From: Stegostoma tigrinum
Taxonomy: Eukaryota
Length of the DNA: 64,000 nt
Assembly (NCBI RefSeq): GCF_030684315.1
Contig: NC_081369.1
Coordinates: 2,222,689-2,286,688, forward strand
Direction of reading: 5' to 3'
Shown: in pieces, positions 19,872-57,319 of the stretch
Layout: the number at the start of each line of letters is the position of its first letter
How positions within the stretch are numbered: the first letter of the stretch is position 1
Position numbers and translations under genes: made by a program
Notes under the pieces: generated by a model
The model's database searches: none
What the model saw: the letters and a program-made list of their open reading frames with translations, nothing else
What the model was told of the DNA's origin: nothing

Positions 19872-19929
19872 ATGGTTTCGGGCATTGTGTTATCTCCATG
19901 TGTGTATATTTTTGTCATTATTTCTGCGG
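19872..19929 (+). CDS. VJ-C1 receptor gene 1, exon 1 (signal peptide)
   Basis: ATG at 19872 encodes hydrophobic MVSGIVLSPCVYIFVIISA, followed by phase-1 donor G|GTATGT and a 101-nt intron to the V exon, as in Ig/TCR leader exons. Confidence 0.85.
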
Positions 19930-20030
19930 GTATGTATTTCTCATTCTATCCCACTCAAGATTTATCCTTTCTCATTTCAAACTTGCCCCTGCCATTTTTG
20001 CTATGCAATATATCATTTTGTTTCAAACAG

Positions 20031-20351
20031 CCATCACAGTTGGTACTATCAAAGTGTCTCAAACACCCGAAAGTGCATACGCTGTCGAAGGTGAAAACTT
20101 TACCTTTTATTGCGCATTCCCTCTTTTTCGCGATCAATCCACTGTGACTATCAACTGGTGGAAACTCGGCGAAACTAAGTTTCTGCAGTCGAGCTCAAAT
20201 GGCAGCAAACGATTTCTTCCTTTGAGGAAAGGTGAGGCCTCTCTTCAACTCTTGAATGTAAAGTTTGATGACTCTGGAGTCTATTACTGCAGTGTAAAAC
20301 ACCTGGATAGCCCCATTGTGAATGGAACTGGGTCAAAACTTATTGTCTATG
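20031..20351 (+). CDS. VJ-C1 receptor gene 1, exon 2: Ig V-set domain with germline-joined J-like strand (NKp30/VJC1-like)
   Basis: Acceptor tttcaaacag|, donor G|GTAAGT, 321 nt, phase 1-1. Translation has VSQTP, Cys (FTFYC), Trp (INWWK), SLQLLNV, DSGVYYC and J-like NGTGSKLIV. Confidence 0.95.
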
Positions 20352-20934
20352 GTAAGTTCAATGTACATTTCAAACTATTTCACTTACTATTAACAACTTA
20401 CAGTTATATGCATTTATTTTCAATAAGATGATCTATAAACCTTGGCTTTTGCTTTCCGGTCGAAAGATGATGCATTGCATTTCACTGCTTATGATGTGCA
20501 TTAACAAAAAGGACTCACGCGAGAAACATGTAACAGGATATGAGTCTGATATAATCACTTTTAAGTTAAACATGGTTGATACTGACCTAGAAACCAACTG
20601 AGAACTGAAACGCAATTCCTTCCATTTCCCAATTGATGAAGGAGTTGCTATAAACCCTGCCATTCTGCCAAATTGTAGACAGTGTTATCACAAACTGATA
20701 GAGCCCTTCTGATATATAACCCCAATTAAGAACGCGAAAGTACCATGAGAAGTGTTGCATTATGTGGCCATTCGATTTGTTTTCATCTTTTTACATTATT
20801 GCTCAAGACCTAACTTTGAAGGATAAGTGCTAAATTACAGAAATTGCCCTCTTCGTAAAAGGCATAATTCAACTAAGATTCAGAATTGAAGAAATATCTA
20901 ATTAAGTAAAAACATGAAACAAGCATATTGGTAT

Positions 20935-21485
20935 TATTTACTGTGTCCAATTTTGGGCCCCACACCTGAGGAAGGGTATACTGGCGCTGGAGCATGTCCA
21001 GTGGAGATTCACACAGATGATCACTGGAATGCCAGGTTTAACATACGATGAATGGCTGAGGATCCTGCGATTGGATTAATTAGAGTTTAGAAGGTTGAGG
21101 GGAGATCTAACAGAAACTTACAAAATAATGTATGGCTTAGAAAGGGTGGATGCTGGGAAGTTGTTTCCATTAGGCAGGAGACTAGGACCTGTTGGCACAG
21201 CCTTAGAATTAGAGAGGGTAAATTTAAAATGGAAATGGGAAGAATTTCTTCAGCCAGAGAGTGGTGGGCCTGTGGAATTCATTGCCACGGAGCGGAGTGG
21301 AGGCCAGGACATTAAATGTCTTCAAGGCAGAGATTGATAAATTCTTGATCTCACAAGGAATTAAGGGCTATGGGGAGAGTGCAGGGGAGTGGAGTTGAAA
21401 TGCCCATTGGCCATGATTAAACGCCAGAGTAGATTCTGTGGGCCAAATGGCCTTACTTCCACTCCTATGTCTTATGGTCTTATGT
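20935..21485 (+). mobile_element. CR1 LINE 3' fragment
   Basis: RGDLTETYKIM motif and tatgtcttatggtcttatg tail. Confidence 0.85.
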
Positions 21486-21554
21486 CCAGGAAAAATCGAA
21501 TATTATTTTCCATAACCTTTGGAAATGGTATTCCCAGTATCTTAAAGTAGAACA

Positions 21555-22788
21555 AAAGTCCTCCCCGGACTGACCTACCCTTCCCTACCTCCCCAGCTCT
21601 ACTGTCCTCTCCACCTATCTTCTCCTCTATCCATCTTCGGTCCGCCTCCCCCTCTCTCCCTATTTATTTCAGAACCCTCTCCCCATCCCCCTCTCTGATG
21701 AAGGGTCCAGGCCTGAAACATCAGCTTTTGTGCTCCTGAGATGCTGCTTGGCCTGCTGTGTTCATCCAGCTTCACACTTTGTTGCATTAATTTGTGCTTC
21801 ATTTTATCAATTCAGAATACCGATATGAGTCTTTACCACTTAGAGATAATGGGAATTGCAGATGCTGGAGAATCTGAGATAACAAAGTTGGATGAACACA
21901 GCAGGCCAAGCAGCATCTTAGGAGCACAAAAGCTGATGTTTCGGGCCTAGACCCTTCATCAAAAAAGGGGGAAGGGGAGAGGGTTCTGAAATAAAGAGGA
22001 AGAGGGTGGAGATGGAACGAAGATGGATAGAGGAGAAGATACGTGGAGAGGGAAGTATGGATGGGGAGGTAGGGAGGGGATAGATCGGCCCAGGGAAGAT
22101 GGACAGGTCAAGGTGGAGGGATGAAGTTAGTAGGTATGAAATGGAGGAGCGGCTTTGGATGGGAGGAGAAGATAGGTGTGAGGAAGAGCTGGTTAGGGAG
22201 GCAGGGATGAGCTGGGGTGGTTTTGGGACACTTTGGGGAGGGGAGATTTTGAAGCTTGTGAAATCCACATTGATACCATTACGCTGCAGGACTCCCAAGC
22301 GGAATATGAGTTGTTATTCCTGCAGCCTTCGGGTGGTATCGTCATGGCACTGCAGGAGGCCCAGGATGGACATGTCATCTAAGGAATGGGAGGGGGAGTT
22401 AAAATGGTTCACGACTGGGAGGTGCAGTTCTTTATTGCAAACTGACAATAAGTGTTCTGCAAAGTGGTCCCTAAGCCTCCGTTTGGTTTCCCAAATGTAG
22501 AGGAAGCCACCACGGGTCCAGTGGATGCAGTATACCACATTGGCAGATGTGCAGGTGAACATCTGCTTGGTATGGAAAGTTATCTTGGGGCCTGGGATGG
22601 GGGTGAGGGAGGAGGTGCAGGGGCAAGTGTAGCACTTCCTGTGGTTGCAGGGGAAAGTGCCAGGTGTGGTGGCGTTGGAGGGGTGTGTGGAGCGGACGAG
22701 GGAGTCACGGAGAGAGTGGTCTCTCCAGAAAGCAGATAAAGGTGGGGACAGGAAAATGTCTTTGGTGGTGGGGTTGGATTGTAGATGG
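21555..22788 (-). mobile_element. Penelope-like element 3' part (GIY-YIG) with inverted terminal repeats; continues at 25547-25730
   Basis: ORF 22314-22805: FTCTSANVVYCIHWTRGGFLYIWETKRRLRDHFAEHL. The sequence gattgtagatgg resumes as cagaagtgtccgagg after the CR1 insertion. Confidence 0.85.
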
Positions 22789-25546
22789 AAAAGAACAAAG
22801 AACAAAGAAAATTACAGCACAGGAACAGGCCCTGCAGCCCTCCAAGCCTGTGCTGATCAAGATCCTCTGTCTAACTTGTCATCTATTTTCTAACGGTCTG
22901 TGTTCATTTGCTCCCCCCCATCCATGTACTTGTCCAAATATATCTTAAAAGACGCTAACATGTCTGCATCCACCACCTCCGCTGGCAACGCGTTCCAGGC
23001 ACCCACCACCCTCTGTGTAAAGAACTTTCCATGCCTATCTCCCCTAAACTTTCCTCCTCTCACTTTGAACTCATGACCCCTAGTAATTGAGTCCTCCACT
23101 CCTGGAAAAAGCATTTTGCTATTCACCCTGTCTATACCCCTCATGATATTGTAGACCTCAATTAGGACTCCCCCCAATCCCCGTCTTTCTAAAGAAAATA
23201 ATCCTAATCTACTCAACCTCTCTTCATAGCTAGCACCCTCCATACCAGGCAACATCCTGGTGAACCTCCTCTGCACCCTCTCCAAAGCATCCACACTCTT
23301 TTTGTAATGTGGCAATCAGAACTGTATACAGTACTCCAAATGTGGCCGAACCCAAGTCCTATACAACTGCAACACGACCCGCCAACTCTTGTACTCAATA
23401 CCCCGTCCAATGAAGGAAAGCATGCCATATGTCTTCTTGACCACCCTATTGACCTGCATTCTCACCTTCAGGGAACAATGGACCTGAACACCCAGATCTC
23501 GCTGTTCATCCATTTTCCCTAGGTCTTTTCCATTTACTGTATAGTTCGCCCTTGAATTAGATCTTCCAAAATGCATCACCTTGCATTTGCCCGGATTGAA
23601 CTCCATCTGCCGTTAATCTGCCCAACTCTCCAGTCTATCTATATTCTGCTGTAATTTCCAACAGTCCCCTTGACTATCTGCTACTCCACCAATCTTAGTG
23701 TCATCTGCAAACTTGCTGATCAGACCACCCACACCTTCCTCCAAATCATTTACATATATCACAAACAACAGTGGTCCCAGCACAGATCTCTGTGGAATAC
23801 CACTGGTCACAGGTCTCCAATTTGAGAAACTCCCTTCTACTCGTACTCTCTGTCTCCTGTTGCCTAGCCAGTTTTTTTATCCATCTAGCTAACACACGCT
23901 GGACCCTATGTGGCTTTACTTTCTCCATCAGCCTGCCATGGGGAACCTTATCAAATGCCTTACTGAAGTCCATGTATATGACATCTACAGCCTTTCCCTC
24001 ATCAACCAACTTTGTCACATCTTCAAAGAATTCTATTAAGTTGATAAGACATGACCTTCTCTGCACAAAACCATTTTCTTCCAAATGGGAATAGATCCTA
24101 TCCCTCAGTATCTTCTCCAGTAGCTTCCCAACCACTGACATCAGGCTCGCCAGTCGATAATTACCTGGATTATCCTTACTGCCCTTCTTAAACAAGGGGA
24201 CAACATTAGCAAGTCTCCAGTCCTCCGGGACCTTACCCGTGTCTAAGGATGCTGCAAAGATATCTGTTAAAGCCCTCGCTATTTCGTCTCTCACTTCCCT
24301 CAGATCCCAGGGATAGATCCCATCTGGACCTGGGGACTTGTCCACCTGAGTGTCTTTTAGGATACCCAACACTTCCTCCATCCTTCTGTCAACTTGACCT
24401 AGAGTAAGCAAACATCTATCTCTAACCTCAACATTTGTCATGTCCCTCGTCTTGGTGACTACCGATGCAAAGTTAAGAATGTCACCCATTTTCTCCGACT
24501 CGACCCATAACTTTCCTTCATTGTCCTTAAGTGGGCCAATCCTTTCTCTAGTTACCCTCTTGCTCTTTATATATGAATAAAAGGCTTTGGGATTTTCCTT
24601 AACCATGTTTGCCAGCAATATCTCATGTCCTCTCTTTGCACTCTTAATCCCTCATTTCAGATTCGCTCTACATTCCCAATATTCTTGCAAAGCTTCGTTA
24701 ATCTTCAGTCACCTAGACCTCATGTATGTTTCCTTTTTCCTCTTGGCTAGTCTCACAATTTCACCTGTCACCCATGGTTCCTTAATCTTGCCATTTCTAT
24801 TCCTCATTTTCACAGGAACATGTCTCTCCTGCACCTAATCAACTTCTCCTTAAAAACCTCCCACATATCAAATGTGGATTTACCTTCAAACAGTTTCTCC
24901 CAATCTACATTCCTCAGATCCTGCCAAATCTTGGTATAGTCAGCCTTCTCGCAGTTTAGAACTCTTCCTTTAGGGCCACTCCTATCCTTGTCCACAACTA
25001 TTGTAAAACTTACGGAATTGTGGTCACTATTTCCAAAGTAGTCCCCTAGTGTAATATCAGCTACCTGGCTGGGTTCATTCCCCAACACCAGGTCCAGTAT
25101 GGCCCCTTCCCGAGTTGGACTACATACATACTGCTCTAGAAAAACCTCCTGGACACACCTTACAAATTCTGCTCCATCTTGACCCCTAACACTGAGTGAA
25201 TCCCAGTCAATGTTAGGAAAATTAAAATCTCCCATCACCACCACCCTGTTTCTCCTACACCTTTCCATTATCATTCACTGCTTGACTCCTCCATGGGGCC
25301 CTCCTTCAGTACGGCTGTGATATCATCTTTGACCAGTACTGCAACTCCTCCACCCCTTTTACATCCCTCTCTATCCTGCCTGAAGCATCGAAATCCTGGG
25401 ACAACTAGTTGCCAGTCATGCCCTTCCCTCAGCCAAGTCTCAGTAATAGCAATAACATCATACTTCCAGGTACCGATCCAAGCCCTAAGCTCATCTGCCT
25501 TATCTACTACACCTCTCGCATTAAAACAAATGCACCTCAGACCACC
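22789..25546 (-). mobile_element. CR1 LINE (endonuclease end + RT) nested in a Penelope element
   Basis: VVMGDFNFPNIDW, ILDLVL, SDHNSV, KSPGPDGIYP, YMDFSKAFDKVPH, SKFADDTK; 3' tail aagaacaaagaacaaag. Confidence 0.95.
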
Positions 25547-26024
25547 AGAAGTGTCCGAGGATGATGTATTGTATCAGGAGGTTGGTGGGGTGGTATGTGA
25601 GGATGAGGGGGATTCTCTTTTGGCAGTTAATGCGGGACGGTGTGTGAGGGATGAGTTGCGGGAAATGCGGCAGACACGGTTGAGGGCGTTCACCGCAACT
25701 TCCTCACCTACCCCCGCAGTGGTCGAGAATGCTGTGCAGATGATAATGATGGCAGCACCAGATGTTGGGAGTAGGAGAATAATTTACAATCACAGCACAC
25801 AGAAGTGAAATGAGGAATCAAGGATTTGGCCTTGCAATTCATATCTGCGGATCTTTCAACAGCTGTAATATAATCTGTGAGATACTTGACGTTTAAATTA
25901 GTGGGAGGATGTTCATTTTTTTTGTCGTACTTTGCCACAAATTTGCCTACCAATCTCCGCAAATACAGTCAGGAGTTAAGATTCTAGTGTAAGACTCTTA
26001 TTTGCTTTGTGGTTAGTTTTAGAA

Positions 26025-26790
26025 TCATAGAATCCCCACAGGGCATGCTATTCGCGCCGTCGAGTCCCCCCCACCCCCACTGCACCACACCCACCCCCCC
26101 AACCCCCGACCCATCTCCACCACAATCCTTAGGATTTGGCCATGGCTAGCACCACTCAACCTGCAAATCCTTAGATACTACTGGGCAATTTTTAAACATG
26201 ACCTATCCACCTAACCTTGGACTTTGGGAAGAACCCGGAGCTCTTACCGGAACCCCACATAGACATGGGGAGAACGTGCAAACTCCACACAGGCCATCAC
26301 CCAATGATGAAATTGAACCCGGACCCCTGGTGTTGTGGGGCAGTACTCAGCATTGCTTTACCATACAACTTCTCGTGTATAGAAAAAAAATAATATTGGG
26401 GTTCATCCTTCAGTATTTCAGTTTTAATTGTCAATTTTCTGAAAGTAATAAAACAATATAAATCGTGTTATTTCCATTTACTGCCTCCGTAATCGTTTCT
26501 TTTTGTTTAATCATATAATCCCTGCAGTGTGGAAACAGGCCCTTTGGCCCAACAAGTCCACACCGACCCTCAGAGCACCCATTCAAACCCACACCCCTAT
26601 AGCCCACCTAGCGTACAAATCCCTGGGCACTACGGGCAATTTAGTATGACCATCCACCTACCCTGCACATCTTTGGATGGTGGAGGGAAACCGGAGCACT
26701 CCAAGGAAACTCACGCAGACACGGGGAGGGTGTGCAAGCTCCACATAGACAGTTGCTCAAGGATGGAATTGAACCCAGGTCCCTGGCTGC
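26025..26790 (-). mobile_element. Two HE1-like SINE copies (~26025-26345 and ~26510-26790)
   Basis: Shared ccggagcac...acacggggagg...caaactccaca body; located in the V-C1 intron of gene 1. Confidence 0.8.
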
Positions 26791-27097
26791 TAACTTATTT
26801 TCTTAATGTGATTTAATATTAAGTTGACTACACAAGTAAATATTTTGTGACTTAGAGTCGAAGCCGTTCTGTTTGAAGTTAACCTAATTGTTTAAAGAAA
26901 TACACGGTCGCTTGACTTATTCGCGTTCAGATATCCTGTCAGGGGTTCAATCCAAAAAGACACTCATGGAGAGGTCATTGCCTGTGCAAATGACTTGACT
27001 GCGCAGAGTCTTTATTTTACTTTTAAAAAGCATCATCTTGACGCTGCCATGCGACCGCATCTGATTTTTTGTTTCTTTTGCGGTTTTTGTCTTGCAG

Positions 27098-27397
27098 TCC
27101 CTCCAATTCCATTGAAAATTACGTCCAAATTACCTGCGAACAATGTATCTGAAACTTTAATTATCTTGTGCAAAACGGCTGCTTTTTATCCAGACAGTAT
27201 TAATCTAACTTGGTACAAGGATGGTGTTCATATGACGAAGGGGATAATGACACTTAAGCACTTGAATTCCAAAGGACTTTATGTGCTTTTTAGCTCCTTG
27301 GAAGTCACACCCGCTGTCCACAAGGTAACCTGTCAAGTCACTCATCGCACACTTCTGATTCCAGTTAGCACCACTCTCTTTGTCTCAAATCGGAAAG
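27098..27397 (+). CDS. VJ-C1 receptor gene 1, exon 3: Ig C1-set domain
   Basis: Long pyrimidine tract with cttgcag| acceptor, donor G|GTGAGC, 300 nt, phase 1-1. C1 motifs LCKTAAFYPDSINLTWYKDG, NSKGLYVLFSSL, TCQVTHRTL. Confidence 0.93.
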
Positions 27398-28156
27398 GTG
27401 AGCCAAAACGTACTGGTAAGAGATGCTTTATGATTTAATCTTGCAGAATATTAACAAACATGCTACTGAAAACCAAGTCCCCACTTTCAAAGCTGTCCAT
27501 GGGTTCCCTTCACTTTTTAAACGTTTAACCATATGTCAACATTTTTAATCCTTTCAATTATGTATTTCAAATCTGCACAAGAAAGGCAGCTTGGAGCAAA
27601 TGATGTAGGTGACATTGTGTGATATGAAACCAGCTCGCAACAGATTATGACTTATCGGTTTCTCGCTTCTATCTTTTGAACGTTCTGAAAGTCTAGTGAA
27701 AACTATGCTGTCCAATGTAGCGTTTGTGTCTGCGTCGAAAATATGAGCAGAAAATAATTCCCATGGATCAATTACTTAAAGAAAAGCTTTATGGAAACAT
27801 TTGTGGCTGTTCATCTCTCAAATAAGACTTCCTTCCTTACCTATTCTCAAATTAATCGATTAGAATATTTTGCGAGACTATTTCTTGCAATAATAGTTTA
27901 CTTGCATTCTTTAAACTATGTTTTAGCTTATCTCTAATTATGAAGATTTACTTTAATCATTTATCCCTGGCAATAAATGTAGTCATGTATTTTCTTAAGT
28001 AGACATTTATTGTCCATTGCACCTAAAGCTTTTATTTAGCTGTTTGCTGTTTGAAAAATATTGTACATTTTGGAAACACAGTTCATCTAAGGAGCATTGG
28101 CATTTGATTATTATTCCCGAATGCAAAAGGATGCTCAAATACCATGATTCAAAAAA

Positions 28157-28477
28157 GGGGTGGTATGGTGGCACAATGAATTAGCACTGCTACCTCACAG
28201 CACCAGGGGCATGGGTTTGATTCCACCCTCAGGTGTCTGTCTGTGAGGAGTTTGCACATTCTCCCCACGTTGGCGTGGGTTTCCTCCGGCTGCTCTGGTT
28301 TCCTCCCACAGTCCAAAGGTTTGCAGGCTAGGTGGATTGGCGAAGCTAAATTGCCCATAGTGCTCAAGGAAGTGTAGATTAGGTGGATTATAGGGAGATG
28401 GATCTGGGTGGTATGCTCTGAGGAGCAGTGTGGACTTGTTGGGCCAAAGTGCCTATTTGCACACTGTAGGGATTCTA
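28157..28477 (+). mobile_element. HE1-like SINE
   Basis: ggtggcacaatgaattagcactgctacctcacagc...gagtttgcacattctcccc...acactgtagggattct. Confidence 0.85.
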
Positions 28478-29364
28478 AAAAAAATGCGCATTGTATGCAA
28501 CAATTATAGCTACAGTGCAGTCTTGCCCATTGCCTTTATTTTATTAGCTGAATAGCAAACAATACTACCCTTTATGGACTCTTGTTAATCAACATGACTG
28601 ATATTTTTATCCTGATATCTTTTTGGAAAATAATTTTCCAGGGATAATTACCCTTCACCCCAAACAGAAGATCATCTTTCAAATCTTCAATCTAATCTAT
28701 TCAGACAAAATAAATTAACAATTAAAATCCCCTGATAAACAACATTTTGTGATGGAGGTATTAATAGCGCAGTGAAATTTAAAATTAGTAATTCTACAAA
28801 TTGTGTATAGATTATGGCACTTTCACAATATTTCCCATGTAAAATTAATTATTCTACAGTTGTGTTGTTCAAATTAATCTGGAGATTTATTATGTTGGAA
28901 AAAAGCAGATATCTTACATTGTAAGAGATAAGCTTCTAACCAGGGCAACAGCACGTAGTTCTTTTGTGACTGATTAAATTAATGAGCTAATGCATTTTAC
29001 TCTCCCATTATATAATTAATAAATAAATAAATATTTAAAGTAAATAAATAAATAATTCATAATTTCCACGAGGAATCTGTTGAGTCCATACAGTTTGTTA
29101 TGATGTATTTTTAAAATTCATAGCTTTAGTTTTCCAGTTTAAAATATGGAATACAAGCCACAGAGCACAAATAATTGCTGATCCATGTGTTCCAGGCTAA
29201 TAGTCTTGATGCTTATCACCTTGCTTATCACCTAATGATTCTGAAATTACAGATCAATTTATTTCAAGCCTGTTCTTGAATATTAAATGCATTTGTTTCA
29301 TAAAAAATGGTTACAACATGCCATCCAGCATAATTCACTAACTACTTTAAATCCTACATTTTAG

Positions 29365-29472
29365 CCCATAGGTTCAACATTCCTTTGATTCCACGTTTTG
29401 TATTGGGTTTTCTCGTGATCTTCATTCTGACGATTATCATTGTTGACCATACCAAATGCCTTAAAGTTGAAG
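29365..29472 (+). CDS. VJ-C1 receptor gene 1, exon 4: transmembrane exon with Arg
   Basis: Acceptor cattttag|, donor G|GTAATC, 108 nt, phase 1-1, in frame with the C1 exon: AHRFNIPLIPRFVLGFLVIFILTIIIVDHTKCLKVE. Absent from the ORF track because it is short. Confidence 0.8.
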
Positions 29473-29779
29473 GTAATCCTTACAGACCAGGATTTTTTTG
29501 CTTTTCAACTGAATTCACTAATCCACAGTTTGTATACAGTGAATATTGAATTGCCAAAAGATTTTGAGGATGCAGAACAGAATATGGAAAATTTCAAATT
29601 ACGATGGAAATTTTGCAAAATTCAACATACTAAATGCTGAGCAAGAATGCAATATATTTATAGCAGTCAATCTGTTTAATTCATTCACTCATTTACCTCT
29701 AGAGTTTCTTGTTCTGAAATACTTCTGAGTACATTTTTCAGCCTACCAGTAGGTTTGTTTTTACTGCTGGCTTTGCACG

Positions 29780-30340
29780 ATGATATGGCTGTTTGACCAT
29801 TTGAAGTGCTATTCATATGCAAAAAAAAATTCTTCACCTCTGCTTGAAACATTCTGCCCCTTCTGTTAAATCTACATCCACCTGGTCATTGATCCCTGCA
29901 TCAAAGGAAAACATTTTTTTTCCTCTCTAATCCAAGCATGCCTTCATAACTTCGTACATCACTATCATGTACCCACTCAATCTCTTCTGCTCTCAGGAAA
30001 ACAATTGCACTCTGTCCAATTTCTCTTCATGGTGATACTCACCAGACCTGGCAACATTATGATATACTTTGTCTGCACATTCTCTAGTGCTATCATATTC
30101 CTCCTTATATGTGGAGTACAGTGCTGCACACAAAACTCTAGCTGTCAACAAACTAACAATTAACACTTTCAGCATAACTTCCCTGTTCTTAAACTCTATG
30201 AGTCAGCTAATATTGGCAAATATCCCATATAGCTTTTTAACCACTTCACCGACTTGCCCTGACACCTTAAGGGTATACATGCATATCAACATCCTTCTGA
30301 TCCTTTGTAGTACCAAATGTAATACCTTTCAACATGTTGT
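29780..30340 (-). mobile_element. Old CR1 3' fragment
   Basis: Degenerate homology to CR1 3' ends (cctggcaacatt..., gtgctgcacacaaaactcta). Confidence 0.6.
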
Positions 30341-30707
30341 CTTGATCAGTCTATTCATCCAAAAACAATAAAAGTTGTGAAAATAAAAGACCATACGGAG
30401 TGACTGGGATAAAGTGGTAGATTTGTGCTAAGTGAATTGTTTATTCCAAAAGTCAATGTCACTAACTGCATCAAGCACCTCCTTTTCCTTTGATCCTGGT
30501 ATGTTCAATGTGCTTTCCTGAAATAATTACGCCAGATATCCAAAGACAAGAATTTTAATTTCCTTGTTTGCACAACTTCTAATGTAACTTGGGAATTTAA
30601 GTTCACCAAAATATATTGTATATTGTGATAAATTGATTTCTGATTAAATCCAAAACTTGTGAACCTCAATTGAAATTAAATATTTTTTGTTTACGCAATC
30701 CGCACAG

Positions 30708-30766
30708 GAAATAACAATGCACATATGGAAAATGAGAACAAACTGACCTGCGGAAACTTAAATTGA
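30708..30766 (+). CDS. VJ-C1 receptor gene 1, candidate cytoplasmic/terminal exon
   Basis: Acceptor tattttttgtttacgcaatccgcacag|; phase 1 gives GNNNAHMENENKLTCGNLN-stop. AATAAA signals occur downstream (~31485, ~31692, ~31900). Alternative tails are possible (see findings). Confidence 0.45.
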
Positions 30767-31243: not shown

Positions 31244-32587
31244 ACTTAAGGTGTAATGGTTTCTCTCGTTTGGTAAAGATGAGATACTCGCCGGCTTGTG
31301 GTTCATCTCAAGAACTGATTGCTCTATTTTATGGAAATAGAGCCCTGCCATCTTATTTGCAGGTGTGAACGAGCATTTCATTTAGTCAGTGCTCTGTCAC
31401 AATGTTTTACATAAAATATTTTACCGGTCTAGCTTCTTCTTTATTATTTCTTTGGAAACTTGCGCTTATTTGGCACTGCGCATGAATAAAGTGTAGATTA
31501 ACCAGCTTTGTTTTTTTTCTGTCTTTGCATGTTGCCTTGCAGTATTGTTGTTCTATGTGGAAAATGGTGAACATTATTTTTATCGGTGCATTCGTCATAG
31601 TGATGATGGTCTTCAAATGCAATTAAATCATGCCATTGCTTAAATCGTGATCATTTAAAAGCACCTAACAGGGCCTAAAAATGTCGATTAATATAAAGTT
31701 AAGGCTTTCAAAGTGATTTCGTTCCGATGTTGCTTTCTTCCAGCATAATGCAATTTTGTTCTAGTCATAGTTTAACTGTTTGAATTGCATTCCTTAACTA
31801 ACATTTAAAAAGTTGATTTGCATTCTCACCAATGCCCCGTTCTGAAGAATGGGTCATTTTCAGCATGTTCAACTGTATTATTGAAGCTGCATTTGATACA
31901 ATAAAAGATTTGAGAATGAAAAACATTCAGGGTCACTTTCTATGTCCAATGATTTAATTTCCGTGGCGAAAGAAGCGCTTAGCATTATCCACGTAAATAG
32001 CAGATTGTTATTTCATAATACTAAAGGAATTCTATCTGTTTTATTAACCTGTTTTAGCTCTCAGAATTATTTGAAGCCAGAAAGTCACAATGTTGTCCAC
32101 CATGGTAGTGGAGCTGTTATTTCATGTTCTGAGAATTTATGTTCAAACTGAAGGTCGCTGCTTCCGTTAATTCCACTGTTTGAATAGAAAAATACCCCGT
32201 CCTCGAAAATGTGTTTCCCTCAAATTCAATCTGAAATCGGCAATTTGCGAACATATTCGCCCTGGTTACACATGATGCTGATTTTCAGTACGTCTGAATT
32301 CCACAAGTGCTGCTATATTAACGAACATATCTGCAGTCTCTTAAAATGAAGGCAGAATATTATTGAATTCCATTTACGGTTTGTTTTATTTCCTTGGACC
32401 ATTTACCCCCACTCTTCCACTGTAAATCACACTGCAATATTTCACCTTAGCCTTTCACATGTAACACAATTAACCTGCGTTTAATTCCTATTCTCCATCG
32501 ATGCCCAATGCCATCATTCCTCACTTCACTCGTCATCTCCCTGTCGCCCGGCCCTACTATTACAGACCCGCCCCCACTCTTCCTTTT

Positions 32588-44665: not shown

Positions 44666-46849
44666 AAGTTATACTGCACTGTGACGCTCTTTGTCTGATG
44701 CTATTTTCAAGTTCTTGCAAATTAACAACCAGTTCACTCTCTGTCTCTCCTTCTAATAGATCAACATGTTCATGACTATTGCACTTTTCTGCCTCTTCGT
44801 TCTCGCATCAGTTTATACGGGCATTCTTTCTCTTTCAATAAAGTCGAGCTCTTATTTAACCTTTATTTAATGTATCATGCTCCGTTCCGTTTGGACAGAT
44901 TAAATCAATCACTGAACCCACGCCTTTTACCTTTCTGTTTAATTTCACTCGTTCGTTTGCGATTGTCTCTTTCTCAGGTTCTGGTGTAACCTCGGCAAAA
45001 GTGACCCAGTTACCGGAGGACGTGGCCAAAACCGTGTTGCAAACGTCTCCTTTCTTTGTTTGATTCCTTTATTTCGAGAGGGCTCAGCTATCAAAGTAAC
45101 CTGGTGGGAACAGGGCGAACACCGTTACCTACACGCGTAGCAAGATGACCGAAAAGTAACTGGCCATAAGACTAAATTCAGTGGTTTCCTTCAAATAATC
45201 AATGTACGTGTCCAGCACAACGGAATGTACTATTGCACAATCATCCATCAAAGCAAATTGGTTGTAAATGGTACAGGGTCCGAATTGACAGTGTGGGCTA
45301 TGTATGGAAACAAGACGTAAGAAATGTCAACACGTAACATTTCACAAATGAAATAATTGTCGGTTGTGCTTGGAAAAGTTCACATTCGAGGCTTTAAAAA
45401 ATGTATTCGGTGGTCCATGTTCTTCAATGGCAAGGCAAACATTTTTGTCCAACCGTAGTTATCCCTGAAATGAATGGCTAACTTGGTCAATTCAGAGAGC
45501 TGTTGAGAGTCAGCAACATTGCTACATATCTTGGGTGACATAGTGTCCAAAAAGATACGAAAGGCAGGCGATGTGTGTGCGCTCCTTGGAGACAGCTCCG
45601 CACTTACCATTACATGTACATATTCAAATTGCACTGCTGGCCGCTGTACTTCATGTAAAATGTTTCAATAATTTAGAGTTATGCATCAGCGACTATATGG
45701 TGCGTAAAAAGGGCATTTCAAATACAATTCAATATGATGAAAAGAAATATACATCAAAATTATTTTGCTTATGAGCAATAGCCCGTCGCGAGAGACACGG
45801 ATTTGACCATATGTGGTGGTTTGTTTTCTACATCTTCTTTCTTGAAGAGCGACAGTTCAGAAGAAGGATCACTGATGTCCAACTTTTAACTCTGCTTTCT
45901 TTTCAGACCTGCTCCCTTTCTCCAGCAATTCCTGTTTATGTTCTGTTGTTGATAACGTTTCTTATTGGGCTTATGTTTTTGCCTTTGTAATTTTAATAAG
46001 GTAAACCTTACGTTCTATGTTTCTAAAATCTTGAAACTGCTCGAGTCAATGTCCTCTGTATTCAACACGCTTTTGGTTTGCAGTAGGTAAGTGAATCCCT
46101 TGGCTTTCGTATCAGTATGAATAAATTTCTGTTCTCCTCTGTTGTTACGCAAGAAGACTTTAGTTTTCCTCAGCCATATCGCATGACAGGCGATCGTCGA
46201 CTGTAAGTCCAATTTAGAGACCATTCAACAATATTTTTGACAGACGTATCTGCGATCTGTAATAACAACAGTCCATGCTTTATTGTTCGCGTTTTGTCTA
46301 GTGATGAGTTAAAGTGACCGTTCACATTGGGCTATATTCAGATATCGGCTCACCACCGCTGTCATCAAACCAGCTCCCATACAGTGCTACCAGCAATTGG
46401 CCAAAACAAAAGACTGGGCTGTAATTTTATTCTGATGTTAAACTAACTATTTTTTCCATTTCGTTTTCACTTTCCTGGTTCCACCGAGTTCACTGAATAT
46501 TATCTCTGAGCAGCCCGAAAAAGATTCATCTGTGGCTCTTACTGTTTTATGCTCGAAATCTCCGTTTTACCCCAAGAATGTTAATGTTAATTTGTACAAA
46601 GTTGGCAGAAAAACGACAAGAGGAATAAATTAATTATTCGAACAACAGAGAATAATCTGTTCGAAGCATCTAGCTGGTTGAAAGAAACACAGACAATCCG
46701 AGCTGGAGCTGTTTACACCTGCATGGTATCTCACAACACCCTCCAAATTTCAACTTGGTTCAGTCACATCGTAACTAATGGCAACATGGGTAAGAATTTT
46801 CATAGAACTGTTATCATTAATAAAGCAGAGCAAATCTTTGATACGTGGA

Positions 46850-49625: not shown

Positions 49626-52600
49626 TGTTAAACACCTTCTGCTGTGACTCAGGATGCTGTCTCTGGTGTAGAAGTCACTGCTGTAAATGAAGCCCATAGG
49701 CTAAAATGATGAAAGAAAACAGAAATTGTTGGAAAAATTCAGCAGGTCTGACAGCATATGTGAAGGAGAAAACAAAGTTAACGTTTCGGGGCCAATGGCC
49801 CTTCCTTCTGAAACGTTAGCTCTGAGTTTTTTTCTTCACAGATGCTGGCAGACCTGCTGACCTTTCCCAGCAACTTCTGTTTGGTTTCCTGATTTACAGC
49901 ATCCATAGTTGTTTCATTTTTTTTTTGTTTAAAAGGATACAGTTTCACTCGTCACTCTTGATTTTTTTTTTTAATCGTCATTTATTGCTTCTTTTTCTTT
50001 GTTCTCATTCATAATTTAAGTGGACCCTTATTTTCTACATCATGGGCTCATGACTACATCTCTAATAACCATTTCATAAGCTGCGGATCTAGAAGATTTT
50101 ATGTGAATCATTCAAAAATGGAGCAATACTATTAGGATCAAGTAGCATGTTGCTGTTGATGTTTACAGTGAAGCCGGAGGTAGGGCTGTTCTTTCTCAGT
50201 TTGCACCTTGTGGCTAGTATTGCAGTGACAGTGTCCTGGATTTCAGACATGCCCTTTTTTGAGTTGTGGATCTTTGGCTAAAACCTAGCAATTATTTTTG
50301 TTGAGGAATAAGAAATTTTGCTGACAGGAAGTCCAATGCCTTTTTTCATATCAATTCATTGTAATTGTTCTAGCCACAATGTGCCATGAATGATGGTCTT
50401 GACTTCTGAGAGTAACACATCCATCACTTAAAGAGATATTGAGTGTGATTTTGAATGACAGTTCAGCAAGGGTGGGCAAGCAAGGGCCAGTGAATCATTG
50501 GAGGGGGTTTTGAGTTAATTATCTGAGTGGACACTCATCACGATCTGAATGATTTGAAGTTTGGTATTAGCTCTGGTGTTTGGCAAGGAATGCCTAACAA
50601 AAGATGGCTCCACAGGCATTTGTCCTGGCATCGATTTTCTTCAACACAGTCCAGGAACCTTTCTTCAATAAAATCATGGACCTTTTTGTGTCACCGACTT
50701 GATATTGCTGTCCAGTCTGAAGAGTTTCAGGAGACTGAGAAAACAATCATCATGATTTATATTCTCTTCAAGTTCACTTTAGGAAATTGAGATTTTGAAT
50801 GAATGTTGTAAAGTTTGCTATCTGAGCCTGCAAAATCCAAACAGAAACAGAAAAGTTTAGTTCTGTAGTCAAATATTTACCCCAGTAAGACTTCACTTAA
50901 AACATTTAATGTTTCCAAACTTTCTGTTCATATGTTAACTGATATGAATAATAGATATTGCTGATTCATGTGTGTAATTTGATTGTTGTAGATGGTGTGA
51001 TCATCAAGTATTTGCTGATTTCTGCAACAACATCAAAAGGATTGATATAATTGGTGCTAGGCCTCACCATAGTGAAACAATGTGTAGCAAAGAAAAAATG
51101 AGTGGGAAATTATTTAATATTTTCAAATGCACATTGTATAAATGCAGTGCCTATTTTAACTTTGTACCATATATCGAAATTTTCTCTATGCAACCAAATG
51201 GCTTAAACAATACAAAAACAACATTGCTGGAAAAGCTCAGCAGGTCTGGCAGCATCTGTGAAGAAAAATTCAGAGTTAATGTTTCAGGTTACCAGACCCA
51301 AAACGTTAACACTGATTTTTTTTCTTCACAGATGCTGCTAGGCCTGCTGAGCTTTTCTAGTAACTTTGTTTTTGTTCCTGATTTACAGCATCTGCAGTTC
51401 TTTCAGTTTTTATTTGGCTTAAATAATAGTTAGCTTGCCTCACAGTATCCGACGCATTGTTAAACATAGCTGCACACCCATCCTTTTAAGATGCGTGTTC
51501 CATCACAACCAGTTTGTCGACCACATTTCTCAAAGAAAACATGCTGCTTCATTGAATACAGTTTTCATCATGGCTGGTGTAATATTTGATCAATGGGACA
51601 CAATATTCAAATATCATCCAACATCCCACAGATACGGGCAAAGTGAATGTGCTTTATTACAAAAGGAAGATTACAAAAGGAACATTGTCTGAGATTCCTA
51701 CATTTTGGGAATTACTGTGCAGATTTCACAGTATTCCTTCATTGGTGAACAATCCCTTTCTGAATATCAAAATATTTCTGTACTCAAATATAGGGCTGTA
51801 TTTTTTCTGAGGAATGGCATTTTCACAAAGATTGGCAATATGACCCTTTTATTACAGATATAAGGGGCTCCCTAAATCTGAAAGGAGCTTCTGATCACAT
51901 ATCCATCAGAAACACTGAGCTCTGCTTCCATTCTATCAGTTCTCTGGTAGTGCAGAACAGTCAGGGAAAAGCAAACTATGCCCCCTTTTTCACAACAGTC
52001 ACCTGCCCTTTTCTGAAGTTTAGCTGTCCAGAATTACAGACAGTCACTTTTGCACCAGCTGTCAAGTGGCAGGTACCTAATGCAGTGTGAGGTTGAGGTG
52101 CTGAGATGGAATGCTGCCTTATAATGAGGTTAATATAGGGCGTCAGATAAATAGGGTGCCAAGTGGAATAGAATGGCAAACTGACATGAATTAGAGTGAT
52201 GGGTGGGAATTATGCAAAATGTGTATGAAGCCAAGTGGATTGGGGGCATTATGCTATGGTGTAGGGTGCCAAGTGGGTAGAATGCCAAATGGGGAGGGAA
52301 AATAGGGCGCCATATGAAGGATAGTGGAATAGCACATGGATAAGTGGAGAATGACATGGCAAACGTAGCTTGCAGACCATTTAAGTGACACAGTGCTTAC
52401 AGTACATCAGGATTATTGAAAAATTGGATTCAGCAGAGCATGGTGGGAGTGATTATTTTGTCCTAGGAGAGTCAGGGCTGCCTGTGGGAAGGGCATGGAT
52501 CGGTTCTGAGAGTGCCAGAGGCAGATCATGTCTGGAAGTGCAGTAAGAGGGATATCATGTCCCAAATGAGGAAGGGGGCAACATGTCCCAGGAAGGTGGA

Positions 52601-52749
52601 GTCAGATTAGGTTTGGAGTGGGGTAAGGGAAGTAGCTTGTTCAAAGCAGGTAATAGTGTTTGTGCCAAGCCTGGAGTAAGAAAAGAAGACTGCAGTTCCC
52701 TGTGCTGGGGAAGATGATCCTGAGCCTCATGGAGCACAGGCAGACTTTT

Positions 52750-54880: not shown

Positions 54881-56367
54881 AGATATTTAGGAATTTAAAT
54901 AAAATGGAAAATTCAGCCCCCAACTATTTGGATTGAATTTATCAGCTCCTTCCGTGAACTGTGGGGTTAAGCAGATCTGAAGGAGCTTACTCTTAACTTG
55001 AGGGTTATTTGTCCATCATTCATGTATAGTGAAATTGATTCAGAGAAATTTGTGGGCATGAAGTCATAGCTATCCAATATCATCAGGTTACCATTCCCAC
55101 AAAAGGAAGAAAATTTCCAGGTCAAAGAATGTTCTTCTCATCACAGCTCAATCACAGGAAGTTTTCATGCATTTTCAGCAATGAATCACAGAGGAAGACA
55201 GAATATTTTCTTTCATGCAACAGCATTGTGTAAGATCATCAAAAATGTTTTCACACAATTGACAATTATATATAGCATTGATAAGGCCATGTTTTTAGTA
55301 TTATTGAAGTTTTAGCACCATGCCTGAAGGGACAACATGCTTAACATTGGTGGAATGCAACTCATGTAAACTAGGCTGGTTGCTGGAATAAAAGGATAAT
55401 ATTATTAGAGAAGATTGTGTAGAGTGGTCTGACATTTCCTGGTGATTTGTTGAATAAAATGTGAATGAGTTGAAAACTGAATGCTTTGTAAGGAATTTGA
55501 CAGATTTATGGAAGGAATTTTTCCCCTTGGTTGGGTTGTCCAGAATATGTGTTGATATTCACAGTATTTACACAGTATTCACAGACATTCATAGATTTAC
55601 AATTGAGGGGAAGGGGCATGTCTTTGTTCAGAAGGTTTGGACTAATAGGGATTTTGGATCACATAGAGATTTGGATGTTCACACGTTGACGAGACTCAAG
55701 AAATGTATCTGAGCTTTAGTGTTTGTAAGTAATTAAGGGTATCATGTGAAAAAGTGGATCAAAGATGAAAGAACAGTAGGGATTATTCGGGGGTGGAGCA
55801 GACAGCAAGGGCCAAATAGTATACTCCTGCTTTATTTCTCACAGTCAATTAATAAACATGCTTCAAGGAGATTTATGGACATATCAGTTTTATTGGTATC
55901 CATAACTACAATTCCTTGTTCTGTTTACCCCATCAATTTTATACTTAATGTGACAGAAACAGGGAGAAGGATGGACATCGGTGTAAATTTACATATATAT
56001 AACATTTTTTCCAACTGTCCAAAGAACTGATGCATTGATGCTTTATGCTGCACTAAATATGAACAATTTACAGAAGGCCCCAAGACTAAGGCATGAAGAA
56101 ATGACAGTATATGCCCAGGTAGGGAAAGACTCAGAACATAATAACATGACATAACTGTCATTAAGAACCTATTGGAGCTCAGTGCCTATAATATCTATAA
56201 TTTTACTTATTAAAAACCTGTTGCACTTGCTCTAATTCAAAGAGACACTGTCTATTTTAATTGCTCTTCCTAGCATTTGAATCCAAATGACTAAAAATTG
56301 AACAAATGATATTCTGAAAATTGTTTTCACTGACAAGGACAAGATCTCAGGATAATAAAGTGACCTA

Positions 56368-56606
56368 AGATAACAAGGTGTCGAACTGGATTAACACAGA
56401 AGGCCAAGCAGCCTTAGAGGAGCAGTAAAGCTGACGTTTCAGGCCGAGACCCTTCTTCAGAAAACTTTCATACCCTTTTTCTAAAGAAGGGCCTAAGCCC
56501 AAAACGTCAGCCTTTCTGCACCTCTGATTCTGCTTGGCCTGCTGTGTTTAACCAGCTCTACACCTTGTTATCTCAGATTCTCTAGCATCTGCAGTTCCTA
56601 TTCTCC
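56368..56606. mobile_element. Fold-back Penelope terminal-repeat insertion
   Basis: Inverted arms; degenerate TSD ataaagtgaccta / ataaaattaccta. Confidence 0.75.
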
Positions 56607-57319
56607 ATAAAATTACCTATGCTGCTTTAGGCTTGCCAGCCTCCAGGAAAACAGAGAAAACAAATTCCAAGGAAAAGAGTACAGAGTACACTCAGGTTTG
56701 GTTGGAAAAACAATGACAACCATTTCAATAAATGCAATAAAAGGCCAGATTAAGTTAATTGCAAGACTTTTTGCCTGTTGTGTACATTGACATTTAGGTC
56801 GACTAACCTTTAATATGTCGAAAACAGGGCATATTGCATTCTGATTACTGAATGATTGCAGTTGGTCTGTAAGAAGATTTCATTTTGTACAAATGTAATT
56901 TATTTGTAGTTTACAGCAGGTTTTTAACTATAATTTACAGTTTAGATTTTGCATTCCCAGCCTAAATAAGGCTCTGTAACTAGGAAAATGAAGTGGTGTG
57001 CAGATTATTTTGCATTTAACACATTTTTTCAGCTTTCAGGAATTGAGACACATTCTGCTAAAACAAAAGTCGTTAATTATTTGTTAAAAGCAAAATAAAC
57101 ACAAAAGGTGCTCAGAGAAACTCAGCAGATCTGGCATCATCTATGGAGACAGATTATTTGGTGAGCGGCTGTGAAAGAAGGAAACAAAGTTTCAACAATC
57201 ATGTAGTAACCGAATTAATAAAAAGAAAATTAAGAAAGTAAACATATAATTGTGTAAAACATGTTTTATTTATTAATAAACATAACAATGTTATGTTTGA
57301 ATGGGAATGTGACACATCC

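What the first reader, a model, noticed from the sequence alone, without database searches (positions are those of the whole stretch)
19872..30766. Apparently intact non-rearranging, antigen-receptor-like VJ-C1-TM gene hidden among repeats
Seen: five exons with canonical GT-AG sites and all phase-1 junctions (58+321+300+108+59 nt) splice into one open frame of ~281 aa: leader, V domain whose J-like G strand is in the same exon, one C1 domain, TM, short tail. No recombination signals flank or interrupt the V exon. Known: C1-set domains are restricted to Ig/TCR, MHC/B2M, tapasin, SIRP, some B7 members and a few non-rearranging VJ-C1 genes (PRARP, VJC1/VC1, UrIg-like), which are discussed as relics of the pre-RAG antigen receptor. 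Inference: this is a member of a cartilaginous-fish germline VJ-C1 receptor family with TCR/IgL-chain architecture whose ligand and function are unknown.
Basis: partly seen in the sequence, partly recalled or inferred. Interest (0 to 1): 0.9.

Follow-up and report, generated by a model that had tools for sequence, protein, structure and literature searches.

The report
Shark non-rearranging VJ-C1 receptor gene
This is a real, intact shark gene for a membrane receptor built like an antibody light chain or T-cell-receptor chain but needing no DNA rearrangement; it is the conserved short-tailed member of a large cartilaginous-fish family of paired inhibitory and activating-type receptors that databases hold only under misleading automatic names.

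Summary
Five exons (19872-19929, 20031-20351, 27098-27397, 29365-29472, 30708-30766) have GT-AG borders, are all phase 1, and add up to 281 codons: leader, VJ domain, C1 domain, TM, short tail. No RSS-like signal lies near the V exon.

Collinear V-C1-TM orthologues exist in eight other sharks, including a 281-aa Hemiscyllium model. Separate V and C1 trees put the window in the same nine-row orthologue clade.

The gene belongs to a family found in sharks, rays, a skate and a chimaera (87 clusters at E<=1e-30). Long-tailed members carry an ITIM...TEY module resembling the SIRP-alpha SHP-2-binding peptide. Short-tailed members, like this one, have Arg/Lys at the start of the TM helix.

A broken inhibitory-type paralogue lies 14 kb downstream (44766-56716).

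By profile score the ectodomain is about as close to Ig light chains as to SIRP-alpha, and somewhat further from UrIg2. It is not a plain orthologue of any characterised gene.

The activating, adaptor-coupled role is inferred only. The Arg is Gln in hemiscylliid orthologues.

Other notes of this scan report similar VJ-C1 genes elsewhere in this genome.

The parts
19872..19929 (+). Exon 1: start codon and signal peptide (MVSGIVLSPCVYIFVIISA plus the first base of a split codon); donor gtatgt
   Evidence: Read directly. 17 of 19 residues are identical to the leaders of the Hemiscyllium and Chiloscyllium orthologues.
20031..20351 (+). Exon 2: VJ domain. Cys...WWK...DSGVYYC and the J-like NGTGSKLIV G strand are all in one exon. 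Phase 1 at both ends.
   Evidence: Pfam V-set 3.7e-10. 78-79% identical to hemiscylliid orthologues and 65% to white shark. In the V tree it sits in a starred 4-row clade inside the 9-row orthologue clade. No RSS.
22890..25274 (-). Antisense LINE remnant inside intron 2 (reverse transcriptase 23749-24618, endonuclease 24813-25274)
   Evidence: Pfam RVT_1 9.2e-12 and Exo_endo_phos_2 3.5e-10.
27098..27397 (+). Exon 3: C1-set constant domain (LCKTAAFYPDSINLTWYKDG ... GLY..SSLEV ... VTCQVTH)
   Evidence: Pfam C1-set 1.6e-13 against C2-set_2 1.9e-6. Best PDB matches are an Ig lambda C domain, UrIg2 C1, IgE and SIRP-alpha. In the C1 tree it falls in the same 9-row orthologue clade, 99*.
29365..29472 (+). 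Exon 4: short stalk, TM helix (IPRFVLGFLVIFILTIIIV) with Arg in its first turn and Asp-His at its inner end, and the start of the tail
   Evidence: Read directly. 23-24 of 35 residues are identical to orthologues. The AF2 model of the orthologue puts a helix at 234-263. Arg is kept in 6 of 9 orthologue-clade rows, window included, and is Gln in the three hemiscylliids.
30708..30766 (+). Exon 5: 18-codon tail (NNNAHMENENKLTCGNLN) and TGA; no tyrosine motif
   Evidence: Read directly. Collinear with the last 18 residues of the 281-aa Hemiscyllium protein, 11 of 18 identical, with the stop at the same position.
31485..31490 (+). First AATAAA after the stop (others at 31622 and 31900); candidate poly(A) signal
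   Evidence: Pattern scan; not verified by reads.
44766..45297 (+). Broken paralogue: leader (44766-44820, followed by GC rather than GT) and VJ exon (from 44978) with a frameshift near 45005-45030 and an in-frame stop
   Evidence: tblastn and frame translations. The V groups with P0020/P0043, a different subfamily.
46478..46782 (+). Broken paralogue: C1 exon, split between two reading frames
   Evidence: The C1 tree puts it in a starred 6-row clade with P0020/P0043.
50994..51095 (+). Broken paralogue: TM exon with an in-frame TAA
   Evidence: tblastn with P0043, E 1.8e-5; sequence read.
56029..56716 (+). Broken paralogue: two cytoplasmic exons (56029-56124 and about 56596-56716) with LYAAL...TVYAQV and ITYAAL...TEYTQV tyrosine motifs
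   Evidence: tblastn against ITIM-bearing family members; sequence read. The motif was compared with the SIRP-alpha peptide printed in PMC5589908.

Best explanation
Window 19872-30766 holds an intact, non-rearranging gene for a type I membrane protein. It has a signal peptide, one VJ-type variable domain, one C1-set constant domain, a TM helix with an Arg in its first turn, and a tail of about 25 residues without signalling motifs.

The gene is the orectolobiform orthologue of a single-copy lineage also found in lamniform and carcharhiniform sharks. That lineage belongs to a large chondrichthyan family of VJ-C1-TM receptors clustered on one chromosome per species.

The family works like a paired-receptor system of the SIRP type. 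Long-tailed members carry an ITIM...TEY tandem tyrosine module and would recruit SHP phosphatases. Short-tailed members such as this one have no such tail, and probably signal through an ITAM adaptor recruited by the TM Arg, or else act as non-signalling partners.

Shown here: the gene structure, the domains, the orthologues, the family and its two tail types.

Inferred: surface expression, adaptor coupling, activating function, and a conserved but unknown ligand bound by the VJ domain.
For: Exons, splice sites and phases were checked. Pfam gives V-set and C1-set. No RSS was found.

Orthologues of 265-289 aa with the same V-C1-TM order were returned from Chiloscyllium, Cetorhinus, Carcharodon and Scyliorhinus torazame. 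Further ones came from S. canicula (269 aa) and Mustelus (342 aa, with an N-terminal extension) and from a collinear 281-aa Hemiscyllium model. The V and C1 trees agree with each other and follow the species tree.

The exhaustive profile search gave 87 clusters at E<=1e-30. Of 27 named hits, 24 are Chondrichthyes, and paralogues share one chromosome-sized record per species.

Tail census: ITIM-bearing long tails versus short tails with R/K at the TM start. The LTYAAL...TEYAxL module has a Tyr-Tyr spacing of 23. The SIRP-alpha peptide ITYADL...TEYASI has a spacing of 24 (PMC5589908).

An inhibitory-type neighbour lies in the same window. The AF2 model has pLDDT 87 with a TM helix, and its best fold matches are Ig light chains.
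Against: No identical protein was returned from the protein collection, so the gene may be unannotated or modelled differently in this genome.

The Arg sits at the very start of the helix and is Gln in all three hemiscylliid orthologues. Adaptor coupling is therefore not a fixed feature of the lineage.

The nearest ITIM-bearing relatives share only 47-54% of V residues, so this is not a recent activating/inhibitory pair with matched ectodomains.

The ligand, the adaptor and the expressing cell type are all unknown.
Confidence: 0.6

Rival explanations
1. The family is an independent, ancient VJ-C1 lineage of the antigen-receptor stem, like UrIg/UrIg2 or PRARP, rather than a SIRP-like one. Its chains pair through V-V and C1-C1 contacts as Ig and TCR chains do.
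For: The contiguous V-C1 profile score to kappa (72.9 bits) and lambda (72.0) light chains is as high as to SIRP-alpha (69.1), and UrIg2 C1 is the second-best PDB hit. The best Foldseek matches are light chains. The J motif is canonical and lies in the same exon as V.
Against: There is no membrane-proximal Cys for a covalent dimer. The homodimer prediction gave no answer. The tails of the long members resemble SIRP-alpha, not Ig or TCR. Linkage to the MHC or to the Ig/TCR complex was not tested, and no SIRP-like, tapasin-related-like or light-chain-like entries appear in the (truncated) published MHC gene tables.
Confidence: 0.2
2. It is a non-signalling or decoy member, like SIRP-gamma. The short tail and boundary Arg have no adaptor role, and the protein acts in adhesion or by competing for ligand.
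For: Arg is replaced by Gln in three orthologues while the rest of the protein stays conserved. Arg lies in the first helical turn, where it could simply reach the lipid head groups.
Against: Arg or Lys at the same TM position recurs in several other short-tailed subfamilies and is kept in 6 of 9 orthologue-clade rows.
Confidence: 0.15
3. It is a B7-family ligand (B7H6/NCR3LG1-like or CD276-like), as some automatic names say, presented to a receptor on lymphocytes.
For: NCBI names some members NCR3LG1-like or CD276 homolog. PD-L1 V domains score about 30 bits with the V exon. B7-H6, PD-L2, B7-H3 and butyrophilins are among the tied top two-domain matches in VIA-align (Z 15-16).
Against: Pfam scores C1-set at 51 bits against CD80-like C2-set at 28 bits. 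The V domain has a J-type GxGxxLxV strand. The family has paired ITIM and charged-TM members, which is receptor logic. Interdomain geometry in an AF2 model is uncertain, and the VIA rows are tied within 1-2 Z.
Confidence: 0.05
4. It is an untranscribed or decaying gene copy that only looks intact.
For: No RNA evidence was obtained. The neighbouring paralogue is clearly dead. No identical protein was found in the collection.
Against: All five frames are open with consensus splice sites. Conservation is spread evenly over V and C1 and follows the species tree, as expected under purifying selection.
Confidence: 0.05

Closest known systems
SIRP family (SIRP-alpha, -beta, -gamma)
   Same: An N-terminal V domain with a J-like strand, followed by C1-set domain(s). 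The family splits into ITIM-tailed members and short-tailed members with a basic TM residue. The tandem tyrosine module (I/L)TYAxL...TEYAx(I/L) has nearly the same spacing as the SIRP-alpha peptide. SIRP-alpha d1-d2 aligns contiguously at 69 bits. NCBI's pipeline names many members SIRP-alpha-like or SIRP-beta-1-like.
   Different: It has one C1 domain instead of two (one skate model has two). It has Arg at the TM start rather than the mid-TM Lys of SIRP-beta-1 (my knowledge, not tested). The V domain is no closer to SIRP V than to IgL or PD-L1 V. Orthology, synteny and CD47 binding were not tested.
Ig light chains and TCR chains
   Same: V(J)-C1 order with the phase-1 exon pattern. Best Foldseek matches over about 215 columns at about 25% identity. 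Profile scores of 72-73 bits.
   Different: V and J are fused in the germline and there is no RSS. It has its own TM exon and no interchain Cys. Family members carry ITIM tails.
UrIg / UrIg2 (non-rearranging shark VJ-C1 genes; PMC12227049)
   Same: A single-exon VJ domain with a split leader, C1-set domains, and a cartilaginous-fish distribution. UrIg2 C1 is the second-best PDB match to the C1 exon.
   Different: UrIg has three C domains and is secreted. UrIg2 has nine to eleven C domains. Here there is one C1 domain and a TM, the gene belongs to a multigene paired family, and the V part aligns to UrIg2 only partly.
NKp30 / NCR3
   Same: A non-rearranging VJ domain with a glycosylation sequon in the J region, an Arg at the TM boundary, and a short tail (my knowledge of human NKp30).
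   Different: NKp30 has no C1 domain. Shark NCR3-like genes are annotated separately on the MHC chromosome. No family member is auto-named NCR3.
PRARP (chicken and other bony vertebrates; Fu et al. 2019, cited in PMC10751288)
   Same: A non-rearranging VJ-C1-TM architecture, discussed as a remnant of an antigen-receptor precursor.
   Different: All 24 sampled single-unit hits are chondrichthyan, so a direct relation was not shown.

Membership tests
VJ-type V-set domain (antigen-receptor-like, non-rearranging) | V-set fold with the canonical Cys...Trp...D-x-G-x-Y-x-C | tested here: met
   Pfam V-set 3.7e-10. FYC...WWK...DDSGVYYC read directly. The V part of the model matches TCR V-delta/V-beta and IgNAR V at rmsd about 2 A.
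VJ-type V-set domain (antigen-receptor-like, non-rearranging) | J-like GxGxxLxV G strand encoded in the same exon as V, with no RSS | tested here: met
   GTGSKLIV at the 3' end of exon 2, directly before the donor. No heptamer/nonamer pair in 19500-20900.
C1-set Ig domain | C1-set sequence profile and fold | tested here: met
   Pfam C1-set 1.6e-13, 51 bits against a cut-off of 21. The C1 part of the model matches MHC class II and class I membrane-proximal domains and IgNAR C1 at rmsd 1.3-2.3 A.
Chondrichthyan VJ-C1-TM paired-receptor family (unnamed) | Groups with annotated family members in both V and C1, in the same order | tested here: met
   V tree 98* (4 rows) inside a 9-row clade at SH-aLRT 91. 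C1 tree 99* (9 rows). The two are congruent.
SIRP family | V domain followed by C1-set domains (two in mammals) | tested here: inconclusive
   V plus one C1 only. SIRP-alpha d1-d2 aligns at 69.1 bits, no better than kappa (72.9) or lambda (72.0).
SIRP family | Inhibitory members with tandem ITIM-type tyrosines that bind SHP-1/2 | tested here: inconclusive
   The motif and spacing are present in family members and in the broken neighbour and resemble the published SIRP-alpha peptide. This gene itself has no such tail. Phosphatase binding is not testable here.
SIRP family | Orthology or synteny with the tetrapod SIRP locus; CD47 binding | not tested
The window holds no flanking marker genes, only repeats.
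Adaptor-coupled activating receptors (FcR-gamma/CD3-zeta/DAP12 partners) | Basic residue inside the TM helix and a short tail without motifs | tested here: inconclusive
   Arg is the third residue of IPRFVLGF... and the tail has no Tyr motif. Arg is kept in 6 of 9 orthologue-clade rows and is Gln in the hemiscylliids. Adaptor binding is not testable here.
Rearranging or germline-joined IgL/TCR cluster | RSS-flanked segments or their joined remnant, a secreted or CD3-type C region, and an interchain Cys | tested here: not met
   No RSS. It has its own TM and tail exons and no stalk Cys. Paralogues carry ITIM tails.
B7 family | V domain without a J motif plus a CD80-like C domain | tested here: not met
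   A J motif is present. C1-set scores 51 bits against C2-set_2 at 28 bits. The structural similarity to B7-H6, PD-L2 and BTN is tied with many other two-Ig proteins.
UrIg/UrIg2 | VJ plus three or more C1 domains; MHC or Ig/TCR-complex linkage | tested here: not met
   There is a single C1 exon between V and TM. Linkage was not tested.

The most novel reading that the evidence does not exclude
This conserved short-tailed VJ-C1 chain may be a surviving non-rearranging relative of the chain type that the RAG transposon invaded. It would pair with itself or another family member through V-V and C1-C1 contacts and recognise a conserved self ligand (MHC-like or B7-like). That would make the family a third shark relic beside UrIg and UrIg2, and one that is membrane-bound and signalling.
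Probability: 0.1. Interest if true: 0.8.

Novelty: new member of a known kind. Interest (0 to 1): 0.45.

Why it matters
Non-rearranging VJ-C1 genes are the material used to reconstruct how antibodies and T-cell receptors arose. Only a few have been described: SIRP, PRARP, NKp30, UrIg and UrIg2.

This gene shows that cartilaginous fishes keep a large, chromosomally clustered family of such chains, with inhibitory and activating-type members. RefSeq holds them only under inconsistent automatic names: SIRP-like, tapasin-related-like, Ig lambda-like, NCR3LG1-like and CD276 homolog.

One lineage, the one in this window, has stayed single-copy across orectolobiform, lamniform and carcharhiniform sharks. 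That is unusual for paired immune receptors and points to a conserved ligand.

The family is a concrete target for phylogeny, synteny and ligand work on the link between SIRPs and antigen receptors. It is not a surprise in kind, and the scan has met similar genes elsewhere in this genome.

Tried and rejected
Joined protein: I did not build or search the joined spliced protein. All searches were exon by exon, by reference.

No spliced-read evidence was obtained. Local scripts only read the window file.

The look-up of sequencing runs: four 2024 runs hold the C1 exon completely, but their type is unknown. No run on record as RNA holds it.

The third homologous-protein run, with a looser E-value, returned the same 24 proteins and added nothing.

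Complex prediction for a homodimer of the orthologue's ectodomain gave 'no answer' (score 0.03). That is no evidence either way.

The two ESM Atlas look-ups gave only generic V-set and V-C1 clusters.

Papers on shark NKp30 (PMC3709836, PMC8273117), UrIg (PMC10530332) and PMC4594805 are not held. A search for PRARP found only unrelated uses of the word. No paper describing this family was found.

Readings rejected: a germline-joined IgL/TCR cluster (it has a TM exon, no RSS, and ITIM paralogues) and NKp30 proper (it has a C1 domain, and NCR3-like genes are annotated elsewhere).

Full report
OBSERVATION

- Exon 1 (19872-19929) starts with ATG in the context TTCAGAATGG and encodes MVSGIVLSPCVYIFVIISA plus one base. 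Its donor is gtatgt.
- Exon 2 (20031-20351) follows the acceptor ttgtttcaaacag and ends before gtaagt.
- Exon 3 (27098-27397) follows tgtcttgcag and ends before gtgagc.
- Exon 4 (29365-29472) follows tacattttag and ends before gtaatc.
- Exon 5 (30708-30766) follows ccgcacag and ends with TGA.

All junctions are phase 1. The split codons read GCC, GTC, GCC and GGA. The inner frames are open over 19, 106, 99, 35 and 18 codons, which gives 281 codons in all.

Every search was made exon by exon, by reference.

Pfam calls exon 2 V-set (3.7e-10) and exon 3 C1-set (1.6e-13, against 1.9e-6 for the CD80-like C2-set). The V exon ends with NGTGSKLIV, a J-type GxGxxLxV strand, directly before the donor. 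A relaxed heptamer/nonamer scan finds nothing in 19500-20900 or 26800-27700, while the whole window gives 15 chance hits.

The 6.7-kb intron between V and C1 holds an antisense LINE, with RVT_1 and endonuclease domains. AATAAA signals follow the stop at 31485 and 31900, and an ATTAAA at 31622.

DO THE EXONS BELONG TO ONE GENE?

Direct RNA evidence could not be had. Nothing from those places was sent to any search afterwards. The four runs that hold the C1 exon completely are of unknown type.

The comparative evidence is strong, however. I used the stop-free ORF around the V exon as a carrier for a region-restricted search. That search returned four shark proteins of 265-289 aa, each with V, C1, TM and a short tail in the same order. 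They come from Chiloscyllium plagiosum (82% V identity by BLAST), Cetorhinus, Carcharodon and Scyliorhinus torazame. Later look-ups added S. canicula, Mustelus asterias, C. punctatum and Hemiscyllium ocellatum.

The Hemiscyllium model (XP_060693848.1) is 281 aa long and collinear to the last residue. Identities to it are:

| Part | Identical residues |
|---|---|
| Leader | 17/19 |
| V | 83/106 |
| C1 | 78/99 |
| TM exon | 23/35 |
| Tail exon | 11/18, stop at the same place |

Three of the four junction residues (A, V, G) are the same.

In separate V and C1 trees the window falls in the same nine-row clade (V: SH-aLRT 91, with a 98* sub-clade of the window plus the three hemiscylliids; C1: 99*). 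The branching follows the species tree: orectolobiforms, then lamniforms plus carcharhiniforms.

C. plagiosum has four predicted isoforms of the orthologue. In NCBI's pipeline that normally needs transcript support; this rests on my knowledge and was not checked.

No identical protein came back from the collection. In this genome the gene may therefore be unannotated or modelled differently.

Another follow-up note of this scan says the genome is the zebra shark. That fits the tree but I did not verify it.

THE FAMILY

A profile of four orthologues was scored against 1.84 billion representative proteins. It found 1794 proteins at E<=0.001 and 87 at E<=1e-30.

Of the 27 listed hits whose names I could look up, 24 are chondrichthyan: sharks of five orders, rays, a skate and the chimaera Callorhinchus. 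The other three are long multi-domain proteins of a frog and a lungfish, one of them named SIRP-gamma-like. Their V domains score poorly against the family V profile.

Within each species the paralogues lie on one chromosome-sized record.

The automatic names are inconsistent: SIRP-alpha-like, SIRP-beta-1-like, tapasin-related-like, Ig lambda-1 light chain-like, NCR3LG1-like and CD276 homolog. I found no paper that describes the family. The key shark NKp30 and UrIg papers are not held, so this is not proof that it is undescribed.

A census of TM segments and tails shows two kinds of member.

- Long tails of 80-150 residues carry a recurrent module, for example LTYAALDLHPSNKTGKPKSRVKNTEYAEL.
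- Short tails go with an Arg or Lys in the first turn of the TM helix, as in IPRFVLGF, IHRFILSF, IYRSILG and IFRLILG.

The tyrosine module resembles the SIRP-alpha peptide DITYADLNLPKGKKPAPQAAEPNNHTEYASI, printed in PMC5589908 as the SHP-2-activating motif. The Tyr-Tyr spacing is 23 in the shark module against 24 in that peptide.

The gene of the finding is of the short-tailed kind. Its Arg is kept in the Mustelus, both Scyliorhinus, Cetorhinus and Carcharodon orthologues, but is Gln in the three hemiscylliids. The inner end of the helix carries a conserved acidic residue, followed by His in most orthologues (VDH, AEH) and by Tyr in the hemiscylliids (ADY).

A SECOND, BROKEN COPY

Fourteen kb downstream, on the same strand, lies a paralogue of a different subfamily (nearest to P0020/P0043). 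Its parts are:

- a leader at 44766-44820;
- a VJ exon from 44978, with a frameshift and an in-frame stop;
- a C1 exon at 46478-46782, split between two frames;
- a TM exon at 50994-51095, with an in-frame TAA;
- two cytoplasmic exons at 56029-56124 and about 56596-56716, which encode LYAAL...TVYAQV and ITYAAL...TEYTQV.

The window therefore holds an intact short-tailed gene next to a dead inhibitory-type gene.

Notes of other first readers place more VJ-C1 pairs 11 kb, 7.3 Mb and 7.9 Mb further along the same sequence. I did not check these.

WHAT IS IT CLOSEST TO?

A 41-member family profile against PDB gives these contiguous V-C1 alignments:

| PDB match | Score |
|---|---|
| Mouse kappa light chain | 72.9 bits |
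| Human lambda light chain | 72.0 bits |
| SIRP-alpha d1-d2 | 69.1 bits (d3 adds 49.4) |
| UrIg2, part of V plus C1 | 56.6 bits |

The V exon alone scores 30-34 bits with antibody V-kappa and PD-L1 V domains. The C1 exon alone scores best with a lambda C domain, UrIg2 C1, IgE and SIRP-alpha.

An AF2 model of the Hemiscyllium orthologue has pLDDT 87 and pTM 0.71, with a TM helix at 234-263. Foldseek matches it best to Ig kappa light chains over about 215 columns.

VIA-align ranks extended two-Ig ectodomains first, all tied at Z 15-16: Rst/Neph, B7-H6, PD-L2, B7-H3 and butyrophilins. It matches the C1 part alone to MHC membrane-proximal domains and IgNAR C1 at rmsd 1.3-2.3 A.

So the ectodomain is about equally distant from light chains and SIRPs, with UrIg2 and B7-family proteins as further, weaker matches. 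Only the signalling tails point specifically to SIRP.

It is not a germline-joined IgL/TCR cluster: it has no RSS, it has its own TM exon and no interchain Cys, and its paralogues carry ITIM tails. It is not NKp30: it has a C1 domain, and shark NCR3-like genes are annotated separately next to ddah2 on an MHC chromosome.

MHC linkage is unresolved. The white-shark MHC is on chromosome 19, while the white-shark orthologue lies on a 193.5-Mb record. I could not establish which chromosome that record is.

HOW IT PROBABLY WORKS

Shown: this is a type I membrane protein with a glycosylated VJ domain (sequons NFT, NGS, NGT), a C1 spacer domain (NVS, NLT), no stalk cysteine, a TM helix with a boundary Arg, and a tail without motifs.

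Inferred: by analogy with short-tailed, basic-TM receptors such as SIRP-beta, NKp30 and other FcR-gamma partners, the Arg recruits an ITAM adaptor and the receptor activates the cell. The long-tailed relatives would recruit SHP phosphatases.

The lineage has stayed single-copy, and its V domain remains 58-79% identical across three shark orders. That suggests a conserved, probably endogenous, ligand.

Three points weigh against the activating reading: the Gln in hemiscylliids, the position of the Arg at the very edge of the helix, and the absence of a closely matched inhibitory twin (nearest ITIM-bearing V domains share 47-54% of residues). A non-signalling, SIRP-gamma-like role is the main functional rival.

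A homodimer test gave no answer.

VERDICT

The gene is a new member of a known kind: a non-rearranging VJ-C1 IgSF receptor with SIRP-like paired logic. It belongs to a cartilaginous-fish family that is annotated but, as far as I could find, not described.

Interest is moderate. It is useful for work on antigen-receptor origins and not surprising in kind, and the scan has met similar genes elsewhere in this genome.

Noticed in passing
window 44766-56716 (+): A broken inhibitory-type paralogue of the same family. It has a leader, a VJ exon (frameshift and stop), a C1 exon (frameshift), a TM exon (in-frame stop) and two cytoplasmic exons with ITYAAL...TEYTQV and LYAAL...TVYAQV motifs. It belongs to a different subfamily from the intact gene.
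   Followed up: yes
window 29365-29472 and orthologues P0001-P0004, P0178, P0179, P0200: The TM helix of this orthologue group ends with a conserved acidic residue, followed by His in most orthologues (IIIVDH, IIIAEH) and by Tyr in the hemiscylliids (IIADY). The Arg at the outer end is Gln in all three hemiscylliid species. No explanation for the acidic inner end.
   Followed up: partly
window 22890-25274 (-): An antisense LINE remnant (reverse transcriptase and endonuclease ORFs) fills much of the 6.7-kb intron between the V and C1 exons. Similar RT-like ORFs recur at 1704-3575, 10606-11940, 33043-36604 and 62700-63940.
   Followed up: partly
proteins P0023, P0050, P0078, P0087: Proteins of unknown taxon with three to six tandem VJ-like domains, each ending in NGTGTQVTI or SGSGTQVTI, turned up among the weaker hits. 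They look like a separate multi-V family.
   Followed up: no
proteins P0185, P0186 (Mobula): Family members with V, TM and an ITIM tail but no C1 domain by Pfam. The C1 exon can apparently be lost or skipped within the family.
   Followed up: no
protein P0006 (Heterodontus), residues about 76-187; window 2358-2510, 23418-23729, 63788-63940: The N-terminal extension of this RefSeq model matches LINE reverse-transcriptase remnants in the window. The model probably includes transposon sequence by mistake.
   Followed up: no
I worked beside them and sent none of their letters to any search.
   Followed up: no
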